NCBI GenBank assembly: GCA_033442325.1
Contig: JAWQFM010000023.1
Location: 814,410 to 878,409, forward strand
Source of the DNA: Salpingoeca rosetta
Lineage: Eukaryota; Protista; Choanoflagellata
DNA length: 64,000 nucleotides
Reading direction: 5' to 3'
The notes below the pieces were generated by a model. The model was not told the origin of the DNA. It made no database searches and was given only the letters and a program-made list of their open reading frames with translations. Shown in pieces: positions 52,872-64,000 of the stretch. Numbering within the stretch: the stretch's first letter is position 1; each line of letters begins with the position of its first letter. Both the position numbers and the translations under genes were made by a program.

Positions 52872-55800
52872 TCAGGCGCTGGCATCGTGCTTCTCGGGTG
52901 GGAGGAGGTGGAATGGCTTGGGAAGGGTGCGCACATTGACGGGAGGGGCGTCCTCGTCGTCGTCAACGGTGGAGGCATCAGCGGCGCCGCCAACGAGGTG
53001 CGTCGGCTTGGGTGGCAGATCTTGGTAGCCGGGGTTGGCGACGACGCCACGCGGCGCAGTGAGCGGGTCGTAGCCGCCGCTGCTGCTGGCCGGGCCTTCA
53101 CGCGTGTAGTTGGGGTTGGAGAAGCCCTCCATGCCCGGCACCTCTGGCACGGGCTCGTTGTTCTGCTGCAGACGGAGCGGGCACGACATGCTCTCCTCGT
53201 TGGTGGCAAGGTGGTTGATCACCTCGCTCACCGTGTTGCAGCGCACGGACAGCGGAATGTCGTTGAGCACAAACTCCGAGCCGTTGTGGCGCAGCGAGTG
53301 GTGCTCCACGCGGCCGTCGTCAATCACCAGGCTGATGGCGTACGTGCCAGGGCGCGCCTTGCTCTCGCGCACGAGGAAGTTGCCCTTGGTGCGGTCCTGG
53401 GCCAGGATGGCCTCGGCCTCGCCGCGGGCAAGCGGGCCGTGCATGTACGTGGGGCGGTCCTTCTTCACCACGCTGCCATAAAAGTCCTGCTGCTCCTGGG
53501 ACAGGGCGCCGTAGAAGTCGCCCTCGGGCTCCGCGGCCTGCGGCGCGTGGCGCACCTGGCCATACTCTTCCTGGAGGTTGAGCAGGGCGCTCGTGCCGTC
53601 CATGGTGCGGCTCAGGTGGTCAATGAGCACGTCAAGCGTCATGCAGTCCGTCTTGGGGCGGTTGCCGTTGATCAGGAAGCGGCCCTGCGCGTCCTTGTAC
53701 AGCTTGTGGTGCTCAAACTGGTTGCCTTCAATCAGCAGCGTAAGCACAAAGTTGCCGTTGGCCGCGCTCTCGCGCACAACAAAGTCACCGACGTTGCCAG
53801 AGTTCTTCAGAACAAAGTCCTCGGCCTCGGCGCGCGTCATCTGGCCCACGTACCAGTCGGGCCGCTGGTTGCCGCCCGGCTGCGAGAACATGGGGTTGTC
53901 AAACAGCAGCACGCTCTGGTCGCGCAGGGACAGCTGGCGCAGGAGCGTGTTGGCCTGCGAAATCTCGTCCGACGCCTTGTTCATCGTCGCCCACTGCTGG
54001 ATGGCCTCGTTCTGGCGGCGGTCCTTGGTCGCCTTGCGGTTGCGCCACACAACAAGCACAATGGCCACAACGAGCACGAGCAGCGCCACAAGCGCAATCA
54101 CAGCCAGGATGCCTGGCGACAGGCTGGCCGCGCTGCCCGTCGAGGCGAGCGGCGTGGTCGTGGCGTTGGTGCTCGTGGTCGTCGTCGTGGTCGTCGTCGT
54201 TGTGCCGCACACGCGGTCCGTGGTGGCGGTAAACTCAGACACAACGTACTCGCCGAGGCGGCAGATGCGGGCCGTCTGGCACTCGCGGTCCGTGGTGGAC
54301 GTGGGCGGCGACACCTCAAACTGGTTGGAGCGGCACTCCTCCACAAGGCTGCACAGCACGGGCGCAAAAGGGTTGGGATCCGAGTCGTCCAGGAACTCGT
54401 CGGCCTCGCACGGCGATGCGGTGAAGCCCATGACGGTTATGTCGCCAGAGACGGACCGGTTGAAGAGGCGAGCCGTAAAGTCCTCGTTGAGGGAGGCGAC
54501 GGTGGCAATGATGGAGCCCTGGCGCAGGTCGATGCGCAGAATCTGCGACGCATCCTGCGTCGTGTTGATGGACTGCACCAGCGCGGCCTCAAACGCCTCG
54601 CGGCGCGACTGCGTGCCGGCAAGGGCGTTGAACTTGGCGTCAAAGATAAGCGAGACAGAGTACGCGGGCGCGCACACGCGGTCCGAGGTGGTGGTGGGCG
54701 GGAGCACCTCAAACTGCTCCATGGGGCAGGTGCTGATGGTGGCGCAGAGGCGGTCCGTCGTGGCCGTGGGCGCCGACACCTCGTACTCCGTGTCCTGGCA
54801 CGAGCGCACGCGCTGGCACTCGCGGTCGTTGACCAGCGACGGCGCAACGAGCTCGTACTCGTTGGACAGGCACTGCGTCCACGGCGAGCAGATGCGGTTC
54901 TGCGTGGGTGTGAGCGGGCGCGAGATGAACGTGTTGTTGGGGCACGTGCGGCCCATCTGGCACTCGCGGTCCGTGCTGATGGTAGGCGCGGCCGTCTCAA
55001 ACGAGCCAGGCTCGCAGGGCGACACGCGCGTGCAGAAGTCCGTGCTGCTGTCGCGGTAGAACAGGCCCTCGATGCAGCGGCGGCACTGGCGGTCGGTGAA
55101 GATGGTGGGGCGCACCACCTCCTCGTAGCCGAGGTCGCACTCCGTCACAGGCGTGCAATCGCGCTGGCCAGAGAGGGCGGCAAAGTCAAGGCCGGCCTGG
55201 CACGGCGTGCACGGCGTGCTGGCGTTGCGGTCCAGGTCGGCGGTGCCGGCCGGGCACAGGAACTGCTCGCAGGAGCCGATGGAGCCCGCGGGCACATAGT
55301 GGCCGTAAGGGCACGGCTGGCAGGCAGTGAGCGGGTTGCGGTCGTGGTCGGTGGTGCCGATGGGGCACGGTTCGCACTTGGCGTCAGAGGTAGAGGTGGG
55401 GGCGCGGATGCGCTGCTCGCCAGGGTCGCACTTGGTGATGAGGTGGCATAGGCGGTTCGACGACGCCGTGGGCGCGGTGCGCTCGTACTCCATCGACGGG
55501 TTGCACTGGGTCAGGTCGCGGCAGATGCGGTCCGTGGTTGGCGTGGCGGGGAACAGCTCAAACTGATCCTGGTCGCATACGTCGAGCGTCGTGCACTCCG
55601 TGTCGCTGGTGGAGGTGCATGGCGCGCTGCGGTACTGCTCATCAGAGCACGTGCTGCACTGCTGGCAAGACACATCGTTCTCCGAGTCGCAGGCGCGCAG
55701 GATGTATGTGTTCGGCGGGCACGCGGAGCAGCCGGCGCACTGCACGTCCTCCAGCGCGGAGCAAGCACGAATCTCGTAGCGGCCGCTGGGGCACTCGGAG

Positions 55801-58800
55801 CACTCCGTGCACTCACGGTCAGAGTCGAGCGTGGGCGCCTGGCTCTGGAAGGTGCCAAACTCGCACTTGCCCACGGCCGTGCACTGCACATCCGTGGTGA
55901 GCGTGGCGTGCGTGGAAATGTACTCTGAGGCCGCGCAACGCGACACGGGCACGCACGTGTCTGAGCCGGCGGGGCGGTAGGTAATGTCCTGGACGCACTT
56001 GCGGCAGAGGCGGTCGTGCTGGCGCGTGGGCTCGCGAATCTCTTCCTCATCCGGGCCGCACTGCGTCACGGGGCGGCACGACTCGGCCTGGCCGTCGACG
56101 GGCTTGAAGGTGGCGCCAAGCTCGCACTGGCTGCACACGCGGTCGCTCGTTGGGGTGGGCTTGGCCGTCTCCTCCTCGCCGGCGTCGCACGTGGTGACGG
56201 GGAGGCAGGGCACGCCCTGGCCAGAGACAGCCTTGTACGTGCCCTCAGGGCACTCGTCGCAGACACGGTCGCTGATGAGCGTCATGGCCTGCACCTCCTC
56301 AAACCCGGGCGCGCACTCTGTGACGTCCTTGCACGTGGTCTGGCCCTCCTCATCCTGGTATGTGATGCCAAAGACGCACGGATGGCACGGCGTGGCGGCG
56401 TCGCTGTCGTGGTCGTGGGTGCCTGCGCGGCAGGTGAAGCTGGAGCAGGAGCCGTGGGAGCCTGCCTCCGTGTAGTGGCCAGCGGGGCACATCTGGCAAC
56501 CCGTGGAGCCGTCGCTGTCCGAGTCGATGGTGCCGGCTGGGCAGTCACGGCACACGCGGTCCGACGAACGGGTTGGCGCAGAGACCTCCTCCTGGCCGCG
56601 CTCGCACTCCTCAATGGGCTCGCACTTGCTGCCGCCAACGGATGGGGAGAACTCCGTCACGCCGTCGCAAGGCAGACAGTCTGCCGAATCGGCGTCGTAG
56701 ACAAGGATGAAGCCAGCGCTGCACTCGCACGTGTCTGTGCAACCCGGGCAGGAACGGCGTGCCTCGTAGGCGTCCATCTGGCGAATGGTGTCGCGGATGC
56801 CATCCTCGCCCTGGCCGGAGCAGCACACGTCAAGCACGACGTCGAGCTGCTCGTCCGTGGGCTCGGCGCACACCATCTCCTCAAATAGCTGCGTGATGAG
56901 CTTGTTGCAGGTGAGCGTGTCACAGGAGCACAGGCGGTCCGTGGTGAGCGTGGGCGGGATGGTCTCGATGAAGGGATCCTCGCACACGCTGGTGGGGAAG
57001 CATGAGGCGCGGTCCGGCAGCGGCTGGTACTCCATGCCGAGGGTGCAGCTCACGCACGCGCGGTCGCGCACGGCGTTGCCAGAAACAGACTCCTTCTGGC
57101 CAGGCTTGCACTCAGTCCAGGGAGAGCAAACGGCGTCGGAGGACGCGGAGCATGGGGTGGAGGCCCAGGTGCCCATGCCACACGAGGTGCATGGCACGCA
57201 GCGGTGGTCCTTGGCGTAGTAGCCGGGAGGGCAATCGGCAATGCACGACTGGCCTTGCTCGTCGACCCAGAGGTTGAGGTTGCCGTCGCACAGGAGGCAG
57301 TTGGTGGCGTCCGGGCCATCACAGTCGGCACACGTGGAGTGGCATTCAGCACACCCGTTGCCGAGCTCATACTCGCCATCGGGGCACTCGCTGATGCAGC
57401 GGCCGTTGCGCAGCTGCAGGTTGGGTCCGCAGGCCGTGCACTCATCGATTGCCGGTCCAGTGCAGCCCTGTTCGAATTGACATGAGGGAATAGAGTGGGT
57501 GGGGGAACGGGTATTGTGGAGGTGAGGCAATGGTAGCACATTTTTGTGAGGTGTTGGGGCAACAAGCACATAGTTATTACACTGAATATCCTACTTGAGA
57601 ACACACACACGTACACGCTCACACACACACACATTCACACACAACACAACGTCTTACGTTGCAGGTGGGGTGGCAGGCGGCGCAGCGGGTGTTTTCGGTG
57701 CCTTCGTTGCCGCCGCAGGTGCCGGCAAGGTACTCGTTAGTGTTACAGGTCGAGGCGTCGGTGCAGTCGGCACAGACACGATCGCGGTTCGCGGCGGGCG
57801 GGGTCAGCTCGTACTGGGTGTTCTCCTCGCAGCGGGTGACGTTGAGGCAGTTGTCCTGGTTAGCCTTTGGCTGGTACGTGACGACGCCAGAGCAGTCGTC
57901 GCACACGCGGTCGGCAAACGTGCTGCCCTCAACGAGAATGTACTCGCCAGGCGAGCAGTCCGTCCACTCCTTGCACGTCGGGTATGCGTGGGACGCGCTG
58001 TCCTGGAAGTAGCCGTCGCGGCACGCCTCGCACACGCGGTCCGTGGAGGTGGTTGGGGCCTGCTTCTCGCGCTCGCCAAGGCCGCACATGGACACGGGCA
58101 TGCAGCCCTCAGCGTTGTCGGTGGTCGAGAACGTCTCGCCGAGCTTGCACGATTTGCACACGGCGTCGGACGTGCGTGTGGCGGGCGTGGCAAGGTACTC
58201 GCCGGGCTCGCACGTGGTCACGCGCGTGCACGAGTCGACAGAGTGCGAGTTGGAGTCCTGGAAGGTGTCGTCGTCACACGGCACGCAGCGGCGGTTGCTG
58301 GAAGTGGTGGGCTCCTCCACCTCCTTCTCGCCGGCGCCGCACAGCGTGTGTGGACGGCACGTCTTCTCGTTCTCTGACTCCGTGTACGTGTTGGGCCCAC
58401 AGGCCTGGCACACGCGGTCCGAGCTGGCTGTTGGGGCGGCCACCTCGCGCGTGCCGGGGCGGCAGTTGGTGACGGGCTTGCAAATCTCCAGGCCCGTGTC
58501 ATCGGCGTAGTTGGTACCGACCTGGCAAGCGCGGCACTTGCGGTCGGAGGTGGGGGTGGGGCCAACGAGCTCAGCCGTGCCGACGGGGCAGTCTGAGACG
58601 GGCCTGCACGTGCGCTGGTTCTCCTTATCCTGGAACGTCTCCGGGGCGTCGCAGCTGACACACGACTGGTCGCGGCGAGCGTTGCCTGTGGTGGAGATGT
58701 GCGTGCCGACGGGACAGGTGGTCCAGGGAATGCACTCGGTCATGTCGTGTCGTTGTCGTCCTGGTACGTGCCGTCGGGGCAAGGGGAGCACTCGCGGTCG

Positions 58801-61800
58801 CTGATGCTGGTGGGCTCCTTGGAGACAAGCTCGCCATCGCCGCACACGGTGAGGTCCACGCACTGGCTCTGCCCGGTCTCGGACTGGTACTGGTTGGGCG
58901 GGCAGGCCTGCTTGTCGTGGGAGCCGCCGAGGCAGTAGTAGCCACGCGGGCACTCGGCAATGCCCGTGCGGGTGGAGATGGTGCCGCCGACGCCGTAGTA
59001 GCCGGGCGGGATCTCCGCGCACTGCGTCTGGCCCTGCTCGGGCTCGTACATGCCGATGCCGCATTCCTGGCAGCTTGGGGAGTTTGTCTCGTCCTGGAAT
59101 GAACCTGCAGCACAGGGCAGGCAGCGCGCGGCGTTCTCCGAATTGGTGAAGGTGCCCGTGCCACAAGCGGAACACTGGCGGTCGGTGGTCAGGGTGGGTT
59201 CGGTTGACACGTACTGGCCGCGCTGGCACACGCTGACAGACTTGCAGAAGAGCTTGCCAGGCTGGTCCTGGTATTCCTTGTCCGCCTCGCATTTGCGGCA
59301 CACGCGGTCGCGAACGCTGTTGGGTGGAGTGTCCTCCTCCTCGCCCTCGTCGCACGTGCTCCACGGGCTGCACTGCGTATCGGTGAAGGTGTTGCCATCG
59401 CAAGGGGTCGAGGCAAACGTGCCGTCATCACAGCTGGTGCAGCGGCGGCAGACGTTGTCGCGCTCGCTGTTGGTGAACTTGAAGTACCCAGTCGGACACT
59501 TGGTCACGCACGAGTTGCCATCAAGGTAGCGATCGCCCTTGCACGAGATGCAGCGGTTCGAACCGGCGCCTGCAGAGGGAGGGTGTGAGTGGTTCAAAAA
59601 AGAGTGTGTGAGCCATGTTGGAGTGGTCGTGTTGGGGCGTGGTGCTTTGTGTGTTGACGTGTGGGGTCATGTGACAAGGATCAGAAATCAAGGAACAAGC
59701 TGGGCGCCGTCAGGAACCCCAGCGCAGAGCAAACAACGCAACAAACACACACCCAAAACGCAGCACAGCAACAACAGGGCACACTTACACACACACACAC
59801 ACGGCACACACACACGCACCGTCGCACTCGGCGCAAGAGGAGTCGCACGGCTTGCAGGTTGCGCCGTCGCGGTATTCGCCTTCGCCGCAGTCAGGGTTGA
59901 CACAGCGGCCGTCCAAAAGGGTGAGGCTTGAGTCGGCGCAAGAGAGGCAGTCGTTCTCCGTTGTTCCGTCACACGTGGCGCACGACGGGTGGCACGACTC
60001 GCACCGCTTGTCGGTGGTGGGACCGCAGGTGCCGACAAGCACCTTGCCGCTGGGGCAGGAGGTGGTGCAAGAGGCGCACACCCTGTTGTTGGAGGGGCTG
60101 GGCGCCGTGGTCTCGTACTGGGTGGAAGAGCACGTGCGCACGGTCTTGCACGAGGACTGGTGCTGTTCGTCCTGGTACTGCGTGACGCCGTTGCAGCGAC
60201 GGCAGGCGCGGTCAGAGGTCGGCGTGGCGGGGCTGGTCTCGATGAAACCGGCACCGCACTGCGTGTGAGGGTCGCACTCGTCACCGCCAGGGCGATCAGA
60301 GAAGGTACCTGGGTGACAGTCGTTGCAGACGCGGTCGTTGGAGCGGGTTGGAGCAACGGCCTGAAACTGGCCCGCCGGGCACTCGGGAGACACAGTCTTG
60401 CAGGACTGGCGGTTGTGGTTTGTCTCATCCTGGTAGGTGGAGCCAAGCGCGCAGGCGCGGCAGTCCACGCCCGAGGTGGACGAGGCGAAGAAGGCGTACT
60501 CGCCAGCATCGCACGTGCCAATGTCCTCGCACTGCTTCGCGTTGACGCCCGAGGAGTATGTGCCTTCCTGGCACTTGCCGCACACGCGGTCGGAGCTGAG
60601 GGTGGGGTCCGCGGCGACAAAGGTACCAGCAGGGCAGTTGCGCACGGGCTTGCAGCTGCCAAAGGTGTGGGAGCTGGCGTCCTGGTACGTGCGGCCCAGA
60701 GAGCACGAGCCGCACACGCGGTCCGTTGTCTGTGACGGGCCACGGCTCACGTACTGGCCAGCACCACACTGGCTTGCGCGCTTGCAGCTGAATAAAGGGG
60801 TTGGTGGAGGGGTTCGGTGGAGGAGGTTGTAGGGTTGTGAGGTTGTGGTGAGTGGAAGCGTAAGGGTACGAAAGCAAAACAAAGGCAGGGGAGACAACAA
60901 CAGCGCACTGCTTGACACTTTGGTGGCTCATGCACACACAGCCATATCACGTTATCTTCAGGGTTCACACAAGTGCACAACAAGTACACACTCACAGTTG
61001 TGGTGCATCCAACGACACTAACTCGTATGCGCGATGAACTTACTCGGATTGGCCGGCCGCGTTCTGGTAGAATTCGCCGTTGCACGCGCGGCGGTTGCAC
61101 GAGCTGCAGGCAAAGCCGGGCTGACAGCGCCTGGGGGCAGACGCGGCAGAGGTGGTGTAGTAGCCGTTGGCGCAGTTGTTGCAGCTGGACGCGCCAGACT
61201 CGGTCTGGTACTTGCCAGCCTCGCAGGACTTGCACGACACCTGGCGGTAGCTGTTCTGGTATGTGCCTGGGGAGCATGCAATGCGGGAGCACGAGCCAGG
61301 GCAGCGGTATCCGGGTTGGCAGCGCGTCTGCGTGCTGGGGCTGCTGCGGTAGTAGCCGGAGGAGCAGTCACGGCACGACGAGCGTCCGGTGTATGGGTTG
61401 TACTGGGAGCTGGGGCAGGTCTCGCAGTCGGCACGGCCATAGTCGTCCTGGAACTTGCCGGCGGGGCAGGAGGAGCACGTTGTGTCCGTATGTGACGAGT
61501 CAGACTGGAACGTGCCAGGGCGGCAGTCGTAGCAGTAGCGGTTGTTGCTGGACCTGAGTTTTGGAGAGCGGGGAGGGAAGAGGTGAGAGGGATTGAGAGT
61601 GTGCGTGTGCGTGTGCGTGTGTGTGTGTGTGTGAATGTGTGTGCGCGCGCGTGTGTGTGTGTGAATAAATGTGTGTTCACGAGGCGGCGCAGCGATGCAC
61701 GGCGAAACGCAGTGCAGTGCACTTCTGCAAGGGAGGCAGGCTCAAGCAGAGGACACGCGTGCGGTTTTGACTCACGAGGCGGCGTATTGGCCACGGCCAC

Positions 61801-63740
61801 ACTTGCGGCTGCTGACGCAATCGTTGCCCCTCTGGTACGAACCACTTGGGCACGTGCACTCGGTACCAGACTGGACCCATCCGCTGTTGTGGAGCGTGTG
61901 GGTGGGCGACGCGGGCGTGAGTATGTCAATAAGTGAGTGGGTGAGTGAGCAGAGGAGGCGCAGACATGTATACACACAAAACCACACACACGCGCGCACA
62001 CACACAACCACACACGTATGCAGGCACGTATTACCTGCGGCAGGAGACGCGGCACTGGTAGAAGCGCCAGCGGCGGTCACGGAAGGTGTAGCTGAAGTCG
62101 GACTGCACACCGCGGATCACATACTTGCTGTTTGCCGTGAAGCTGGTACTGCAAGGGTCAGGCGCAGGCGCGGGCAGGAGGAAGAGGAGGAGGAGGACGG
62201 TCATGCGAGTTGAGTGGAAGAGCTTGTGTCACATGGGATTGTGGGGCAGCGACACAAAGAAGGCGTTCACATGTGCACACATGCATGCACAGTACAAACG
62301 ACAGGCAAGCACAAGCAGCGTGTCTTACGTGGTAGTAGTAGAAGGGGTAGTAGAAGTAGTAGAAGTACTACACCACAAGCAAGCATCGCACAAACGCATG
62401 GTGAGTTGGTCCAGACAGGTCATGAACATTCACACAGCTAAGCGTGTATATGTATGTGTGTGTGGTGAGAACGTATGCCCATGTAGTCATGATCACAGCC
62501 TCCCTTGCACGATTGTCCACCCCCTGCCCCGAACACACATAACCCCATTAACTCCTTACGTAGTAGAAGTAGTATGGGTAGTAGCTGGGCCAGTTGTTGG
62601 TCCATCCACTCCACGAGCAGCTGCTGTGGTACGGGCCGTTGTTGTTCGTTGTTGTTTGTGTGGTCTGCACAGCCAATGCGCCAACGACTGTGTGTGTGTG
62701 TGGGGGGACAGCAGCAGACGATCGTGGTGTGCACGTTAATCAGCATGTGTACAGGGTGCAATGCACAGATGGACCAGCAACTTGGGTCAGCAGTTTGCTG
62801 ACACGCTGATCACATAAGAGCAAGCACACACAGTGACCGAAGCGTGGCTGCAGCAATAACAAGGGATACACAGGTGTACCAAACGGCCCAGACACACACA
62901 CACACACACTCTCTCTCACCGATCGCGGTAGCCATCGGAGTGGCCAGCCTGAATGCGGTAGATGGCCTGACCGTTGGGGCATGTCTTTGTGAACCCGCCA
63001 TAGTAGCTGTTCTCATAGCCACCAAAGCTGCGGTACGTGATGGAGTTGACTGAAGGCAGGAGGGAAAACCAGGTGAGGTAAGAAGGTGGCGTGATGGTGC
63101 GTTCGTATGGAAGCAGGCATGTGGCCGCACCCATGCACACGCACACACAAAGGCACATCTTCGCTGTCATGTCTCACCGTTGGTGCATCGGAAAGAGTAG
63201 CGACGGTCAACTGTCACGCGGATGCACATCAACACACAGAGATACATGTTGGTGAGATGCTGATTCAACAAGCACGCAGGACAAACAAACAAACAGGACG
63301 GCACAATTGCAATCTATCACAACAAGCAAACCCCAAGCAGGCACTTACGACGGCTGTTGCTGAAGACGCCATACCAGCCGTCAAGGACCTGGTTGGAAGG
63401 GCAGGTGAAACTCAGATAGCCACCAAAGTTGTTGGCCCTGTAAACAGACACAAATCATGCACGAGTTTGTTTTGTGTTGGCGTTTGCATGTAAGACAGGG
63501 CAGAAGAAGGAAGGTGAACGTGTGCACTTGTCCAATGTGCAGCAAGCAGTGTGCAGCGGTGGTGTTTGCCATGGGAAAACTGTTCAGGCAGGCAGACTGC
63601 GCCACGGGAACACACGCTGCCAAGACACAGAGGACACTGCTGCAGGCCGATACATGCGTGACCACCACCACCACCACCACCCTCCACGTCAGCACACGCA
63701 CGCACCAGCCATGAAAGCCGGACGGCTGTCCAGTGGCCAC
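52872..63740 (-). CDS. Giant single-pass receptor: dermatopontin-like N-terminus, many furin-like/TNFR/GCC2-GCC3 Cys repeats, SEA-like module, Thr-rich stalk, TM helix, two SH2 domains, no kinase; 5' end beyond the window
   Basis: About 12 exons, the largest 52872-57467. Repeated C..G.Y/F..PT.TSDRVC and CH.TC..C.GP units. TM ILAVIALVALLVLVVAIVLVVW followed by RNRK. SH2 motifs WYVGQMTRAEAE..FVVRES and HGPLARGEAE..FLVRES. Frame breaks at ~58744 and ~62640. Confidence 0.88.
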
Positions 63741-64000
63741 CTACAAACAGCAACAACAAAACCATCGTGCAGACATCATGCAGTCAGAGGGTCGTTTGGG
63801 CTCGGTCAATGCTGTGCCAAAGCAGCGGAGAAGCCACCAAAGGGGGATGATGACGACGGTCACCCCCTTAAACCCAAACAAACGCATTGGTTCCCACGCC
63901 AACAAAAGCAACGCAAACACAGAAAGAAAACACAGCGAAACAACAGCGCGACGCGCCCCACAAACCTCCACCAACAACCACCCGGCACACCCCACACCCA

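What the first reader, a model, noticed from the sequence alone, without database searches (positions are those of the whole stretch)
62042..63740. Dermatopontin-like domain caps a kinase-less dual-SH2 receptor
Hand splicing of small exons that the ORF track does not join gives GWANNFGGYLSFTCPSNQVLDGWYGVFSNSRLDRRYSFRC, YENSYYGGFTKTCPNGQAIYRIQAGHSDGYRDRRWRIGC and CSWSGWTNNW..YVIRGVQSDFSYTFRDRRWRFYQC. This is the three-fold W.N..F.CP..S..DR.W.F.C pattern of dermatopontin. Established: dermatopontins are small secreted ECM/agglutinin proteins of animals, and TM-SH2 proteins are known from choanoflagellates. Inference: an adhesion or agglutination module on a very long stalk wired to phosphotyrosine signalling, a candidate for bacterial capture or colony adhesion.
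Basis: partly seen in the sequence, partly recalled or inferred. Interest (0 to 1): 0.72.

Follow-up and report, generated by a model that had tools for sequence, protein, structure and literature searches.

The report
Dermatopontin-headed receptor with two SH2 domains
This choanoflagellate gene encodes a single 2,905-residue surface protein with a dermatopontin head, a very long cysteine-rich stalk, one membrane span and two phosphotyrosine-binding SH2 domains but no kinase. It is made as one mRNA and is conserved in a second species, but its function is untested and the assembled DNA here has frame-breaking indels in the head.

Summary
Minus-strand exons at 63740-62035 match Pfam DERM in colinear order; the last exon alone scores above the curated cut-off. 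RNA reads and RNA contigs splice these exons, through canonical junctions and consistent phases, to Ephrin_rec_like/TNFR_c6 exons. Those run into the 4.6-kb last exon with a membrane span and two SH2 domains; no kinase domain was found. The start codon and signal peptide lie just beyond the window end. The mRNA-supported coding sequence is 8,715 nt, or 2,905 aa.

One caveat: as assembled, the third DERM repeat is out of frame. The window differs from the mRNA by +10, -12 and -8 nt there, and lacks one base at 58748. A silent, decayed partial duplicate on another contig and an orthologue both show the intact form.

The orthologue, from ocean metagenomes, has the same DERM-stalk-membrane-SH2 order on one contig. 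This is the only locus in the genome where DERM and SH2 lie together.

The adhesion, capture or signalling role is inference. The scan and one paper already record many dermatopontin-headed surface proteins in this organism, so I rate this a new variant of known kinds, of moderate interest.

The parts
63706..63740 (-). Exon 1b: end of the signal peptide and first residues of the DERM head. Exon 1 (ATG plus 15 codons) lies outside the window, at the equivalent of 64056-64012 (L001 1544-1500).
   Evidence: RNA joint 63436/63705. RNA loose end at 63741 matches G000:C23:878422-878451 exactly.
63349..63437 (-). Exon 2: DERM repeat 1, first part.
   Evidence: Pfam DERM profile 1-27, E 3e-4; RNA joints on both sides.
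63178..63210 (-). Exon 3: DRRYSFRC end of DERM repeat 1.
   Evidence: RNA joints 63210/63349 and 63049/63178; phase-consistent. Too short to scan alone.
62920..63049 (-). Exon 4: DERM repeat 2.
   Evidence: Pfam DERM profile 46-86, E 2.7e-5.
62560..62687 (-). Exon 5: end of repeat 2 and start of repeat 3 with a Tyr-rich run. It is 128 nt in the window and 130 nt in the mRNA. The window has an extra 10-nt tandem copy (62637-62656) and lacks 12 nt near 62567, which breaks the frame.
   Evidence: The orthologue reads the same two motifs in one frame.
62329..62367 (-). Exon 6: 39-nt tyrosine-rich micro-exon inside DERM repeat 3.
   Evidence: RNA joint at 62367 (175 reads in X22) and loose end at 62329. 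The orthologue has the Tyr-rich run in one open frame.
62035..62148 (-). Exon 7: last part of DERM repeat 3. It is 114 nt in the window and 122 nt in the mRNA (8 nt missing after 62148).
   Evidence: Pfam DERM profile 118-152, E 1.2e-10, 42.2 bits; RNA joint 61883/62035; alignment to the second copy.
61776..61883 (-). Exon 8: first cysteine-rich linker module after the head.
   Evidence: RNA joints 61883/62035 and 61551/61774 (cut +2); open frame in the required phase.
61044..61553 (-). Exon 9: Ephrin_rec_like repeats.
   Evidence: Pfam PF07699, E 1.4e-13; RNA joints.
59820..60787 (-). Exon 10: TNFR_c6 repeats.
   Evidence: Pfam PF00020, E 1.9e-21; RNA joint 60787/61044; RNA contig pieces.
57658..59569 (-). 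Exon 11: TNFR_c6 and Ephrin_rec_like repeats. The window lacks one base after 58748.
   Evidence: Pfam. An extra G is seen in 226/249 and 20/24 reads and in both contig runs. The frame and the orthologue residue agree.
52872..57467 (-). Exon 12 (1,531 codons plus stop): more TNFR_c6 repeats, a SEA-like module, a poly-Thr segment, the membrane span, and the cytoplasmic tail with two SH2 domains.
   Evidence: Pfam TNFR_c6 E 1.5e-57 and SH2 E 3.6e-25; splice sites. The 7,907-nt RNA contig extends 5,451 nt beyond 58001.
54045..54113 (-). Membrane-spanning helix, followed by a basic stop-transfer stretch.
   Evidence: Sequence; predicted as a long helix.
53886..53903 (-). Invariant juxtamembrane F-D-N-P-x-F motif, of the LDL-receptor-type FxNPx[YF] class.
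   Evidence: Invariant in five homologues (alignment A1). The resemblance to the LDLR motif is from my own knowledge.
53616..53855 (-). SH2 domain 1.
   Evidence: PF00017 hit at C23:868025-868264; FVVRES arginine invariant; fold pLDDT about 80.
53211..53447 (-). SH2 domain 2.
   Evidence: PF00017 hit at C23:867620-867856; FLVRES arginine invariant; fold pLDDT about 80.

Best explanation
One single-copy, 13-exon gene on the minus strand encodes a type I membrane protein of about 2,905 residues. Per an earlier scan note, the organism is Salpingoeca rosetta. In order, the protein has a signal peptide, a three-repeat dermatopontin (DERM) head, and roughly 2,300 residues of Ephrin_rec_like and TNFR_c6 cysteine-rich repeats forming a long stalk. 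Then come a SEA-like module, a poly-threonine segment, one membrane helix, and a cytoplasmic tail. The tail has an FDNPxF motif, two SH2 domains joined by a disordered linker with three invariant Tyr-Gly sites, and NPxY-type motifs. It has no kinase.

Shown: the exon structure, the single transcript, the domain content, conservation of the architecture in a second species, and strong conservation of the tail.

Inferred: the DERM head at the tip of the stalk binds an external surface or matrix component, and binding clusters the protein. The two SH2 domains then dock it onto tyrosine-phosphorylated partners at the membrane, such as activated receptor tyrosine kinases or Src-phosphorylated adaptors. 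Its own tyrosines may become docking sites in turn. On this reading, an adhesion or capture event is read into the phosphotyrosine network without a kinase in the receptor itself.

The frame breaks in the assembled head are most likely assembly errors.
For: DERM: the exons hit only PF14704, in colinear order.

One transcript: canonical RNA joints link every exon from 63705 to 60787. RNA contigs of 1,411 and 7,907 nt tile the gene to its 3' end, and read orientation fits minus-strand RNA. Phases are consistent throughout, and the exon lengths sum to 8,715 nt, which is 3 x 2,905. The first exon encodes a typical signal peptide.

Stalk: PF07699 and PF00020.

SH2 domains: two matches, each with an invariant FLVRES arginine. 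The closest solved relative is the Syk tandem SH2 (E 7e-15), and two SH2 folds are predicted at pLDDT about 80.

Conservation: ocean-metagenome contig L002 has DERM exons (profile 1-28, 70-107, 116-152) upstream, on the same strand, of a 2,459-aa open frame. That frame is 77% identical in the tail and has TNFR_c6, Ephrin_rec_like and two SH2 domains. The tail is 46-79% identical in five homologues.

Uniqueness in the genome: no other DERM hit lies within 20 kb of an SH2 hit; the two loci 24-26 kb apart have the wrong order for one gene with a DERM head. The tail has no close paralogue.

Assembly errors: every run, including DNA, shows an extra base at 58748. At sites where the second copy differs, the RNA reads the window's base (0/133 at 62980, 0/120 at 60156, 0/162 at 58872) yet carries the intact head.
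Against: No functional data of any kind: no ligand, localisation, phosphorylation or partner is known.

As assembled, the window's DNA encodes a stop inside the last DERM exon. I have no DNA read evidence for an intact head at this locus in the assembled strain.

The 10-nt deletion is seen directly only in one RNA contig (X4). In X22 it is inferred from a drop in depth to 38, against about 140 in the neighbouring exon. A 10-nt gap would also put a 101-nt read below the 95% likeness limit, so those reads could not have shown it.

The full DERM head was never scanned or folded as one joined sequence.

The two RNA contigs overlap by only about 5 nt at 60701-60705. Continuity there rests on even raw-read depth across a single open exon.
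Confidence: 0.7

Rival explanations
1. It is an uptake (endocytic or phagocytic) receptor rather than an adhesion or signalling receptor. The head binds prey bacteria or particles. The FDNPxF and NPxY motifs recruit PTB-type endocytic adaptors. The built-in Syk-like tandem SH2 takes the place of the separate SH2 kinase used by animal engulfment receptors such as Draper with Shark.
For: FDNPxF next to the membrane is invariant, and NPxY and NPGY motifs are conserved in the tail. The best solved match of the SH2 pair is the Syk tandem SH2. The ectodomain is long and built of cysteine-rich repeats. The parallels with LDLR, CED-1, Draper and Shark come from my own knowledge.
Against: Motif-level resemblance only. 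No ITAM-bearing partner and no PTB adaptor has been identified. The similarity to Syk is at the level of single SH2 domains, and the model gives no defined arrangement of the two domains (pTM 0.30).
Confidence: 0.25
2. In the assembled strain, the gene at this locus is a broken allele. The three indels are real, translation stops in the last DERM exon, only a two-repeat secreted fragment is made, and the receptor part is not translated from this start.
For: The window's exon 5 (128 nt) and exon 7 (114 nt) give a stop in exon 7 when read from exon 4. The indels lie in repeat-rich sequence that mutates easily. DNA run X1 shows rearranged contig ends at 62444-62707.
Against: RNA from three runs in two studies shows only the intact junction forms: 175 reads for the 12-nt form and none listed for the window form. 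These reads carry the window's own bases at sites that distinguish it from the second copy. The same gene has a proven 1-nt assembly error at 58748. The exons are otherwise under visible constraint, and the orthologue is intact.
Confidence: 0.1
3. The dermatopontin exons belong to a separate small secreted protein, as another first-stage note on the same stretch read them, and the SH2 receptor is an independent neighbouring gene.
For: Most described dermatopontins are small secreted proteins. The last DERM exon ends close to a cysteine-rich boundary where a gene could plausibly end.
Against: There are 46 to 85 spliced reads per junction in X22 linking 62035 to 61883 and 61774 to 61551. One RNA contig spans from exon 1 to exon 10. 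There is no in-frame stop at the end of exon 7 and no start codon or signal peptide at exon 8. The orthologue has the same order, with the last DERM repeat and the next cysteine-rich module in a single open frame.
Confidence: 0.03

Closest known systems
Dermatopontin (DPT/TRAMP) and invertebrate DERM proteins, Pfam PF14704
   Same: Three tandem repeats, each ending in a D-R-x-W-x-[FY]-x-C type motif. There is a C-P pair in repeats 1 and 2 but not in repeat 3, a tyrosine-rich stretch inside repeat 3, and a position straight after the signal peptide. The HMM match is colinear over the profile. The comparison with human DPT is from my own knowledge.
   Different: Classical dermatopontins are free secreted proteins of about 20 kDa. 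Here the domain is the tip of a 2,905-residue membrane protein. Repeat 3 is interrupted by a longer Tyr-rich insert, encoded partly by a 39-nt micro-exon.
Other dermatopontin-headed surface proteins of S. rosetta (DERM/EGF_CA genes of PMC7971027; DERM-tipped collagen, Sushi and lectin proteins in earlier scan notes)
   Same: A DERM head on a very long extracellular stalk in the same organism. The family is greatly expanded: 89 exon matches.
   Different: This is the only locus where DERM lies with SH2. The stalk is made of TNFR_c6 and Ephrin_rec_like repeats rather than EGF_CA, collagen or Sushi. The gene is not among the PF14704 entries I could see in that paper's supplement, which held no SH2 entry; the file was cut when stored.
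Syk/ZAP-70/Shark tandem SH2 modules and their ITAM receptors
   Same: Two SH2 domains in tandem, both with the phosphotyrosine-binding arginine. The best solved sequence match is the Syk tandem SH2 (E 7e-15, two stretches).
   Different: There is no kinase domain. The SH2 pair is tethered to the membrane as part of the receptor itself. The linker is about 40 residues, predicted disordered, and carries three invariant tyrosines, rather than forming a helical interdomain.
Choanoflagellate receptor tyrosine kinases with TNFR- or furin-like cysteine-rich ectodomains (for example M. brevicollis RTKB2, PMC3584944)
   Same: Type I topology and a cysteine-rich TNFR-like ectodomain, in a lineage with a very large phosphotyrosine toolkit. 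Phosphorylated RTKB2 tail repeats bind SH2 domains, which suggests the kind of partner this protein could dock on.
   Different: The cytoplasmic part has SH2 readers instead of a kinase writer.

Membership tests
Dermatopontin domain (Pfam DERM, PF14704) | HMM match above the curated gathering score | tested here: met
   The last DERM exon alone scores 42.2 bits against a cut-off of 28.3 (E 1.2e-10). Exons 2 and 4 add 21.4 and 24.9 bits. The whole-genome six-frame scan also finds this locus.
Dermatopontin domain (Pfam DERM, PF14704) | Colinear coverage of the whole 152-position profile by one reading frame | tested here: inconclusive
Profile positions 1-27, 46-86 and 118-152 are covered in order. 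The orthologue's exon covers 70-107. Exon 3 is too short to scan, and exon 5 gave no hit alone. The frame is continuous in the mRNA but not in the window's DNA.
Dermatopontin domain (Pfam DERM, PF14704) | Three internal repeats, each closed by a D-R-x-W/Y-x-F/I-x-C motif | tested here: met
   Read directly from exons 3, 4/5 and 7. The same three motifs are in the orthologue.
Dermatopontin domain (Pfam DERM, PF14704) | Extracellular location (signal peptide upstream) | tested here: met
   RNA-supported exon 1 encodes Met, a basic residue, a hydrophobic run and a small-residue cleavage region, directly before the head. Judged by inspection, with no predictor run.
SH2 domain (PF00017) | HMM match above cut-off, twice | tested here: met
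   88.3 bits in two stretches; 51.5 and 48.2 bits in the genome scan.
SH2 domain (PF00017) | Phosphotyrosine-binding arginine of the FLVRES motif | tested here: met
   R117 and R252 of alignment A1 are invariant in five homologues.
SH2 domain (PF00017) | Actual phosphopeptide binding | not testable with these tools
   Needs recombinant protein and phosphopeptides.
Receptor tyrosine kinase | Cytoplasmic protein kinase domain | tested here: not met
   No kinase family among the Pfam hits on any exon. The tail is fully accounted for by the helix, two SH2 folds and disordered segments.
Syk/ZAP-70 family | Tandem SH2 followed by a tyrosine kinase domain, cytosolic | tested here: not met
   The SH2 pair resembles Syk at the domain level only. 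There is no kinase, and the pair is membrane-tethered.
TNF receptor superfamily | A few TNFR_c6 repeats that bind a TNF-like trimer, plus a death domain or TRAF-binding tail | tested here: not met
   TNFR_c6 repeats are abundant, but there are dozens of them along about 2,300 residues, and the tail has SH2 domains and no death domain. Only the repeat type is shared.
SEA domain | HMM or fold match, and a G-S-[VI]-V-V type self-cleavage site in the beta2-beta3 turn | tested here: inconclusive
   G-S is invariant in five homologues (GSII, GSIV or GSVV). It sits between two predicted strands in a beta-alpha-beta-beta-alpha-beta model of low confidence (pLDDT 60). There is no Pfam SEA hit and no significant Foldseek match, only generic ferredoxin-like folds at E 0.07 or worse.

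The most novel reading that the evidence does not exclude
This is a pre-animal capture or adhesion receptor built with the opposite logic to animal immunoreceptors. Instead of carrying tyrosine motifs that recruit a cytosolic tandem-SH2 kinase, the receptor carries the Syk-like tandem SH2 reader itself. It also has endocytic NPx[YF] motifs and a self-cleaving SEA-like force-sensitive module under a 2,300-residue stalk tipped by dermatopontin. Binding of a bacterium, the theca or a neighbouring cell would pull on or cluster the receptor. That would dock it onto phosphorylated kinases or adaptors, linking prey capture or cell-cell contact to phosphotyrosine signalling in the closest relatives of animals.
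Probability: 0.25. Interest if true: 0.75.

Novelty: new variant of a known kind. Interest (0 to 1): 0.5.

Why it matters
Choanoflagellates have a phosphotyrosine toolkit as large as that of animals, yet almost none of their receptors has a known ligand or function. This protein joins an extracellular matrix and agglutination module that animals also use to phosphotyrosine readers in a single chain, without a kinase. It is single-copy, well expressed, differs about 11-fold between two samples of one study, and is conserved in at least one other marine species. Genetic tools exist in S. rosetta, so it is a concrete, testable candidate for how a unicellular relative of animals couples surface contact (prey, substrate or sister cells) to tyrosine-phosphorylation signalling. 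It also shows that dermatopontin heads were being combined with many kinds of stalks and anchors before animals arose. On the practical side, the public assembly has frame-breaking errors in this gene, so automatic gene models probably split or truncate it.

Tried and rejected
1. I looked in the window for micro-exons that could supply the 20 and 9 extra RNA letters. There were none. The letters turned out to be indel differences, present intact in a second gene copy on contig C30.

2. I considered that the RNA comes from the C30 copy. Rejected for four reasons. The RNA reads the window's bases at sites that distinguish the copies. It starts at the window locus's exon 1. It covers 58001-58280, which C30 lacks. 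And C30 has no membrane span or SH2 end and is broken into many open frames.

3. The key 2008 and 2012 papers on choanoflagellate SH2 architectures are not held. Phrase searches for membrane-spanning SH2 proteins found nothing.

4. N-termini of the more distant homologues P0002, P0003 and P0004: their contigs are too short, or no DNA was served, so I could not test whether they also carry a DERM head.

5. A metagenome scan with the orthologue's third repeat found only that same species again.

6. A sequence search of solved structures with the DERM repeat found no relative.

7. SEA-like module: no Pfam hit and no significant fold match. It is kept only as something noticed.

8. All searches were made exon by exon, by reference.

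9. Not used: the large representative-protein search (no claim here rests on absence from all databases) and complex prediction (no specific binding pair is claimed).
Full report
WHAT IS THERE. The finding lies at the 5' end of a large minus-strand gene. An earlier scan note names the genome as Salpingoeca rosetta. I did not verify the name independently. It fits the 55.4-Mb genome size and a paper on dermatopontin genes in that species. Reading the minus strand gives short exons with canonical AG|..|GT borders at 63740-63706, 63437-63349, 63210-63178, 63049-62920, 62687-62560, 62367-62329 and 62148-62035.

IS IT DERMATOPONTIN? Against Pfam, exon 2 matches DERM profile positions 1-27 (E 3e-4) and exon 4 matches 46-86 (E 2.7e-5). 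The last head exon matches 118-152 (E 1.2e-10; 42.2 bits, above the curated 28.3). No other family is hit, and the order is colinear. Each of the three repeats ends in the D-R-x-W/Y-x-F/I-x-C motif.

IS IT ONE TRANSCRIPT WITH THE SH2 RECEPTOR? Raw RNA reads of two 2026 runs and contigs of a 2011 run were laid on 58001-64000.
- Spliced reads join 63436/63705, 63210/63349, 63049/63178, 62367/62568, 61883/62035, 61551/61774 and 60787/61044, with 39-175 reads each in run X22.
- One 1,411-nt RNA contig runs from upstream of 63741 to 60701. A 7,907-nt contig runs from 60705 through 58001 and 5,451 nt further. That length equals the rest of exon 11, the 4,596-nt last exon and about 500 nt of 3' UTR.
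- The two contigs overlap by only about 5 nt, but they meet inside one open exon that has even read depth.
- Exon phases are consistent at every junction.
- An RNA loose end at 63741 matches, without mismatch, a sequence 13 nt beyond the window end. There an ATG opens a 15-codon exon that, together with exon 1b, forms a typical signal peptide directly in front of the head.
- With the RNA-supported exon lengths, the coding sequence is 8,715 nt, or 2,905 codons.

THE REST OF THE PROTEIN.
- Exons 9-12 carry Ephrin_rec_like (E 1e-13 and 2.5e-11) and many TNFR_c6 repeats (E down to 1.5e-57).
- The last exon then has a poly-threonine stretch, a 23-residue hydrophobic helix followed by basic residues, and two SH2 domains (88 bits in total).
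- No kinase or any other catalytic family is found.
- In an alignment with four database homologues, the tail is 46-79% identical. Invariant features are an F-D-N-P-x-F motif near the membrane, the FLVRES arginine of both SH2 domains, and three Tyr-Gly sites in the inter-SH2 linker. NPxY-type motifs in the C-terminal tail are conserved but not invariant.
- The closest solved sequences are the Syk tandem SH2 (E 7e-15), then the SHP2 and ABL SH2 domains.
- A structure prediction gives the helix and two SH2 folds at pLDDT about 80. The linker and C-tail are disordered, and there is no confident inter-domain arrangement.

THE FRAME PROBLEM AND THE SECOND COPY. In the window's DNA, the end of repeat 2 and the start of repeat 3 lie in different frames of exon 5, and exon 7 needs a phase that exons 5 and 6 do not supply. 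Read literally, translation stops in exon 7. The RNA differs from the window in exactly this region:
- one copy instead of two of a 10-nt tandem repeat (62637-62656; seen in the X4 contig);
- 12 extra nt near 62567 (175 reads in X22, 9 in X21, and X4);
- 8 extra nt at the start of exon 7 (41 loose-end reads, and X4).
With these three changes the head is a single open frame.

The extra letters are absent from the window but are found on contig C30. That contig holds a second, partial copy of the gene at C30:63417-72176. It is about 94% identical overall, with nearly identical exons, and carries exactly these three indel states. This copy lacks exon 1, the equivalent of 57610-58280, and the membrane span and SH2 end. 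Its last-exon part is broken into many frames.

The RNA does not come from C30. At positions where C30 differs from the window, the RNA reads the window's base (0/133 at 62980, 0/120 and 0/121 at 60156 and 60164, 0/162 at 58872). It also starts at the window locus's exon 1 and covers 58001-58280. A further one-base omission in the window at 58748 is seen by every run, DNA included. Restoring it gives a histidine that the orthologue also has.

My reading is that the expressed allele at this locus is intact, and that the window's indels are assembly errors in low-complexity sequence. A private broken allele remains possible at about 10%. For X22 the 10-nt state is inferred, not seen. Depth there falls to 38, against about 140 in exon 4, and a 10-nt gap would put a 101-nt read below the 95% likeness limit.

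CONSERVATION.
- The best database homologue is P0001: 2,459 aa, 77% identical in the tail, with TNFR_c6, Ephrin_rec_like and two SH2 domains. It is encoded on contigs of about 10.4 kb from ocean metagenomes.
- Upstream on the same strand of contig L002 lie DERM exons matching profile 1-28, 70-107 and 116-152.
- There the end of repeat 2 and the start of repeat 3 are in a single frame. The Tyr-rich run, the last DERM repeat and the next cysteine-rich module form one open frame.
- This independently supports the mRNA reading here. It also shows that the architecture is conserved in a second species.
- A metagenome scan found no third species. The contigs of the more distant homologues are too short to test.

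HOW UNUSUAL IS IT?
- DERM is not restricted to animals. This genome has 89 DERM exon matches at roughly 25-30 loci.
- A published survey lists ten DERM/EGF_CA genes in S. rosetta (PMC7971027).
- Earlier notes of this scan describe DERM heads on collagen, Sushi, lectin and other stalks, and also kinase-less membrane proteins with their own SH2 domain. Those notes are leads, not evidence.
- Crossing the DERM and SH2 genome scans, this is the only locus where both lie together.
- The held supplement of that paper has PF14704 entries but no SH2 entry.
- I could not read the 2008 papers on choanoflagellate SH2 architectures.

MECHANISM (INFERENCE). The anatomy is that of a receptor whose tip is an adhesion and agglutination-type module, held far from the membrane on a rigid cysteine-rich stalk. 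Its tail can read but not write phosphotyrosine. The most economical model is that ligand or surface binding clusters the protein, and the SH2 pair docks it on tyrosine-phosphorylated neighbours. Candidates include choanoflagellate receptor kinases, whose phosphorylated tail repeats are known to bind SH2 domains (PMC3584944). Its own conserved tyrosines could then extend the scaffold. The FDNPxF and NPxY motifs and the Syk-like SH2 pair make an uptake-receptor variant a serious rival. None of this is tested.

VERDICT. The functional reading remains a hypothesis. This is a new combination of two module types that are each already recorded in this lineage, so I rate it a new variant of a known kind, of moderate interest. 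It also has practical value in flagging assembly errors that break the gene.

Noticed in passing
G000:C30:63417-72176 (loci L011, L014, L013); matches window 63747-58281 and 57609-54388: A second, partial copy of this gene on another contig, about 94% identical, with nearly identical exons but diverged introns. It lacks exon 1, the equivalent of 57610-58280 and the membrane span and SH2 end. Its last-exon part is broken into many frames, and it appears silent in the RNA runs. It nevertheless keeps the intact form of the three indels that break the window's head. DNA run X1 carries its diagnostic bases, so it is real DNA rather than only an assembly artefact.
   Followed up: partly
window 58748: The window lacks one base here. 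226/249 and 20/24 RNA reads and both contig runs, one probably DNA, have an extra G. Restoring it fuses the open frames 58740..59597 and 57619..59403 and yields a histidine that the orthologue shares.
   Followed up: yes
window 54345-54677 (-): A roughly 110-residue module just outside the membrane, with a G-S pair (GSII, GSIV or GSVV) invariant in five homologues. The pair sits in the turn between two predicted strands of a beta-alpha-beta-beta-alpha-beta fold, which is the layout of self-cleaving SEA domains. The model has low confidence (pLDDT 60), and there is no Pfam SEA hit and no significant fold match.
   Followed up: partly
window 58001-64000, runs X21 and X22: With equal amounts of data read (about 1.6 billion letters each), run X22 lays 6,027 reads on the gene and run X21 lays 535. 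That is roughly an 11-fold difference in expression between two samples of the same 2026 study. The sample conditions are coded and unknown to me.
   Followed up: no
window 62444-62707: Contigs of DNA run X1 end here or jump with unrelated letters in between (62464 to 62690; 62707 to 62444). This suggests structural polymorphism or repeat-driven assembly breaks around exon 5 and its flanking introns in that strain.
   Followed up: no
window 58106-62988: The RNA runs of 2026 differ from the window at about 30 fixed positions in 6 kb, and the 2011 run differs at a partly different set. Some of the 2026 variants equal the C30 copy's base (58381, 58658, 58693, 58702, 59845). This could reflect strain differences or gene conversion between the two copies.
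   Followed up: partly
window 53886-53903 (-): An F-D-N-P-x-F motif 20-odd residues inside the membrane is invariant in all five homologues. It resembles the LDL-receptor internalisation signal.
   Followed up: no
G000 contigs C11:421761, C21:359536, C15:393503, C13:775398, C3:2499889, C12:1075051: Other SH2 matches sit inside very long single open frames (about 1,200-1,900 aa). This may mark further large SH2-bearing proteins or receptors in this genome. None is a close relative of this gene's tail.
   Followed up: no
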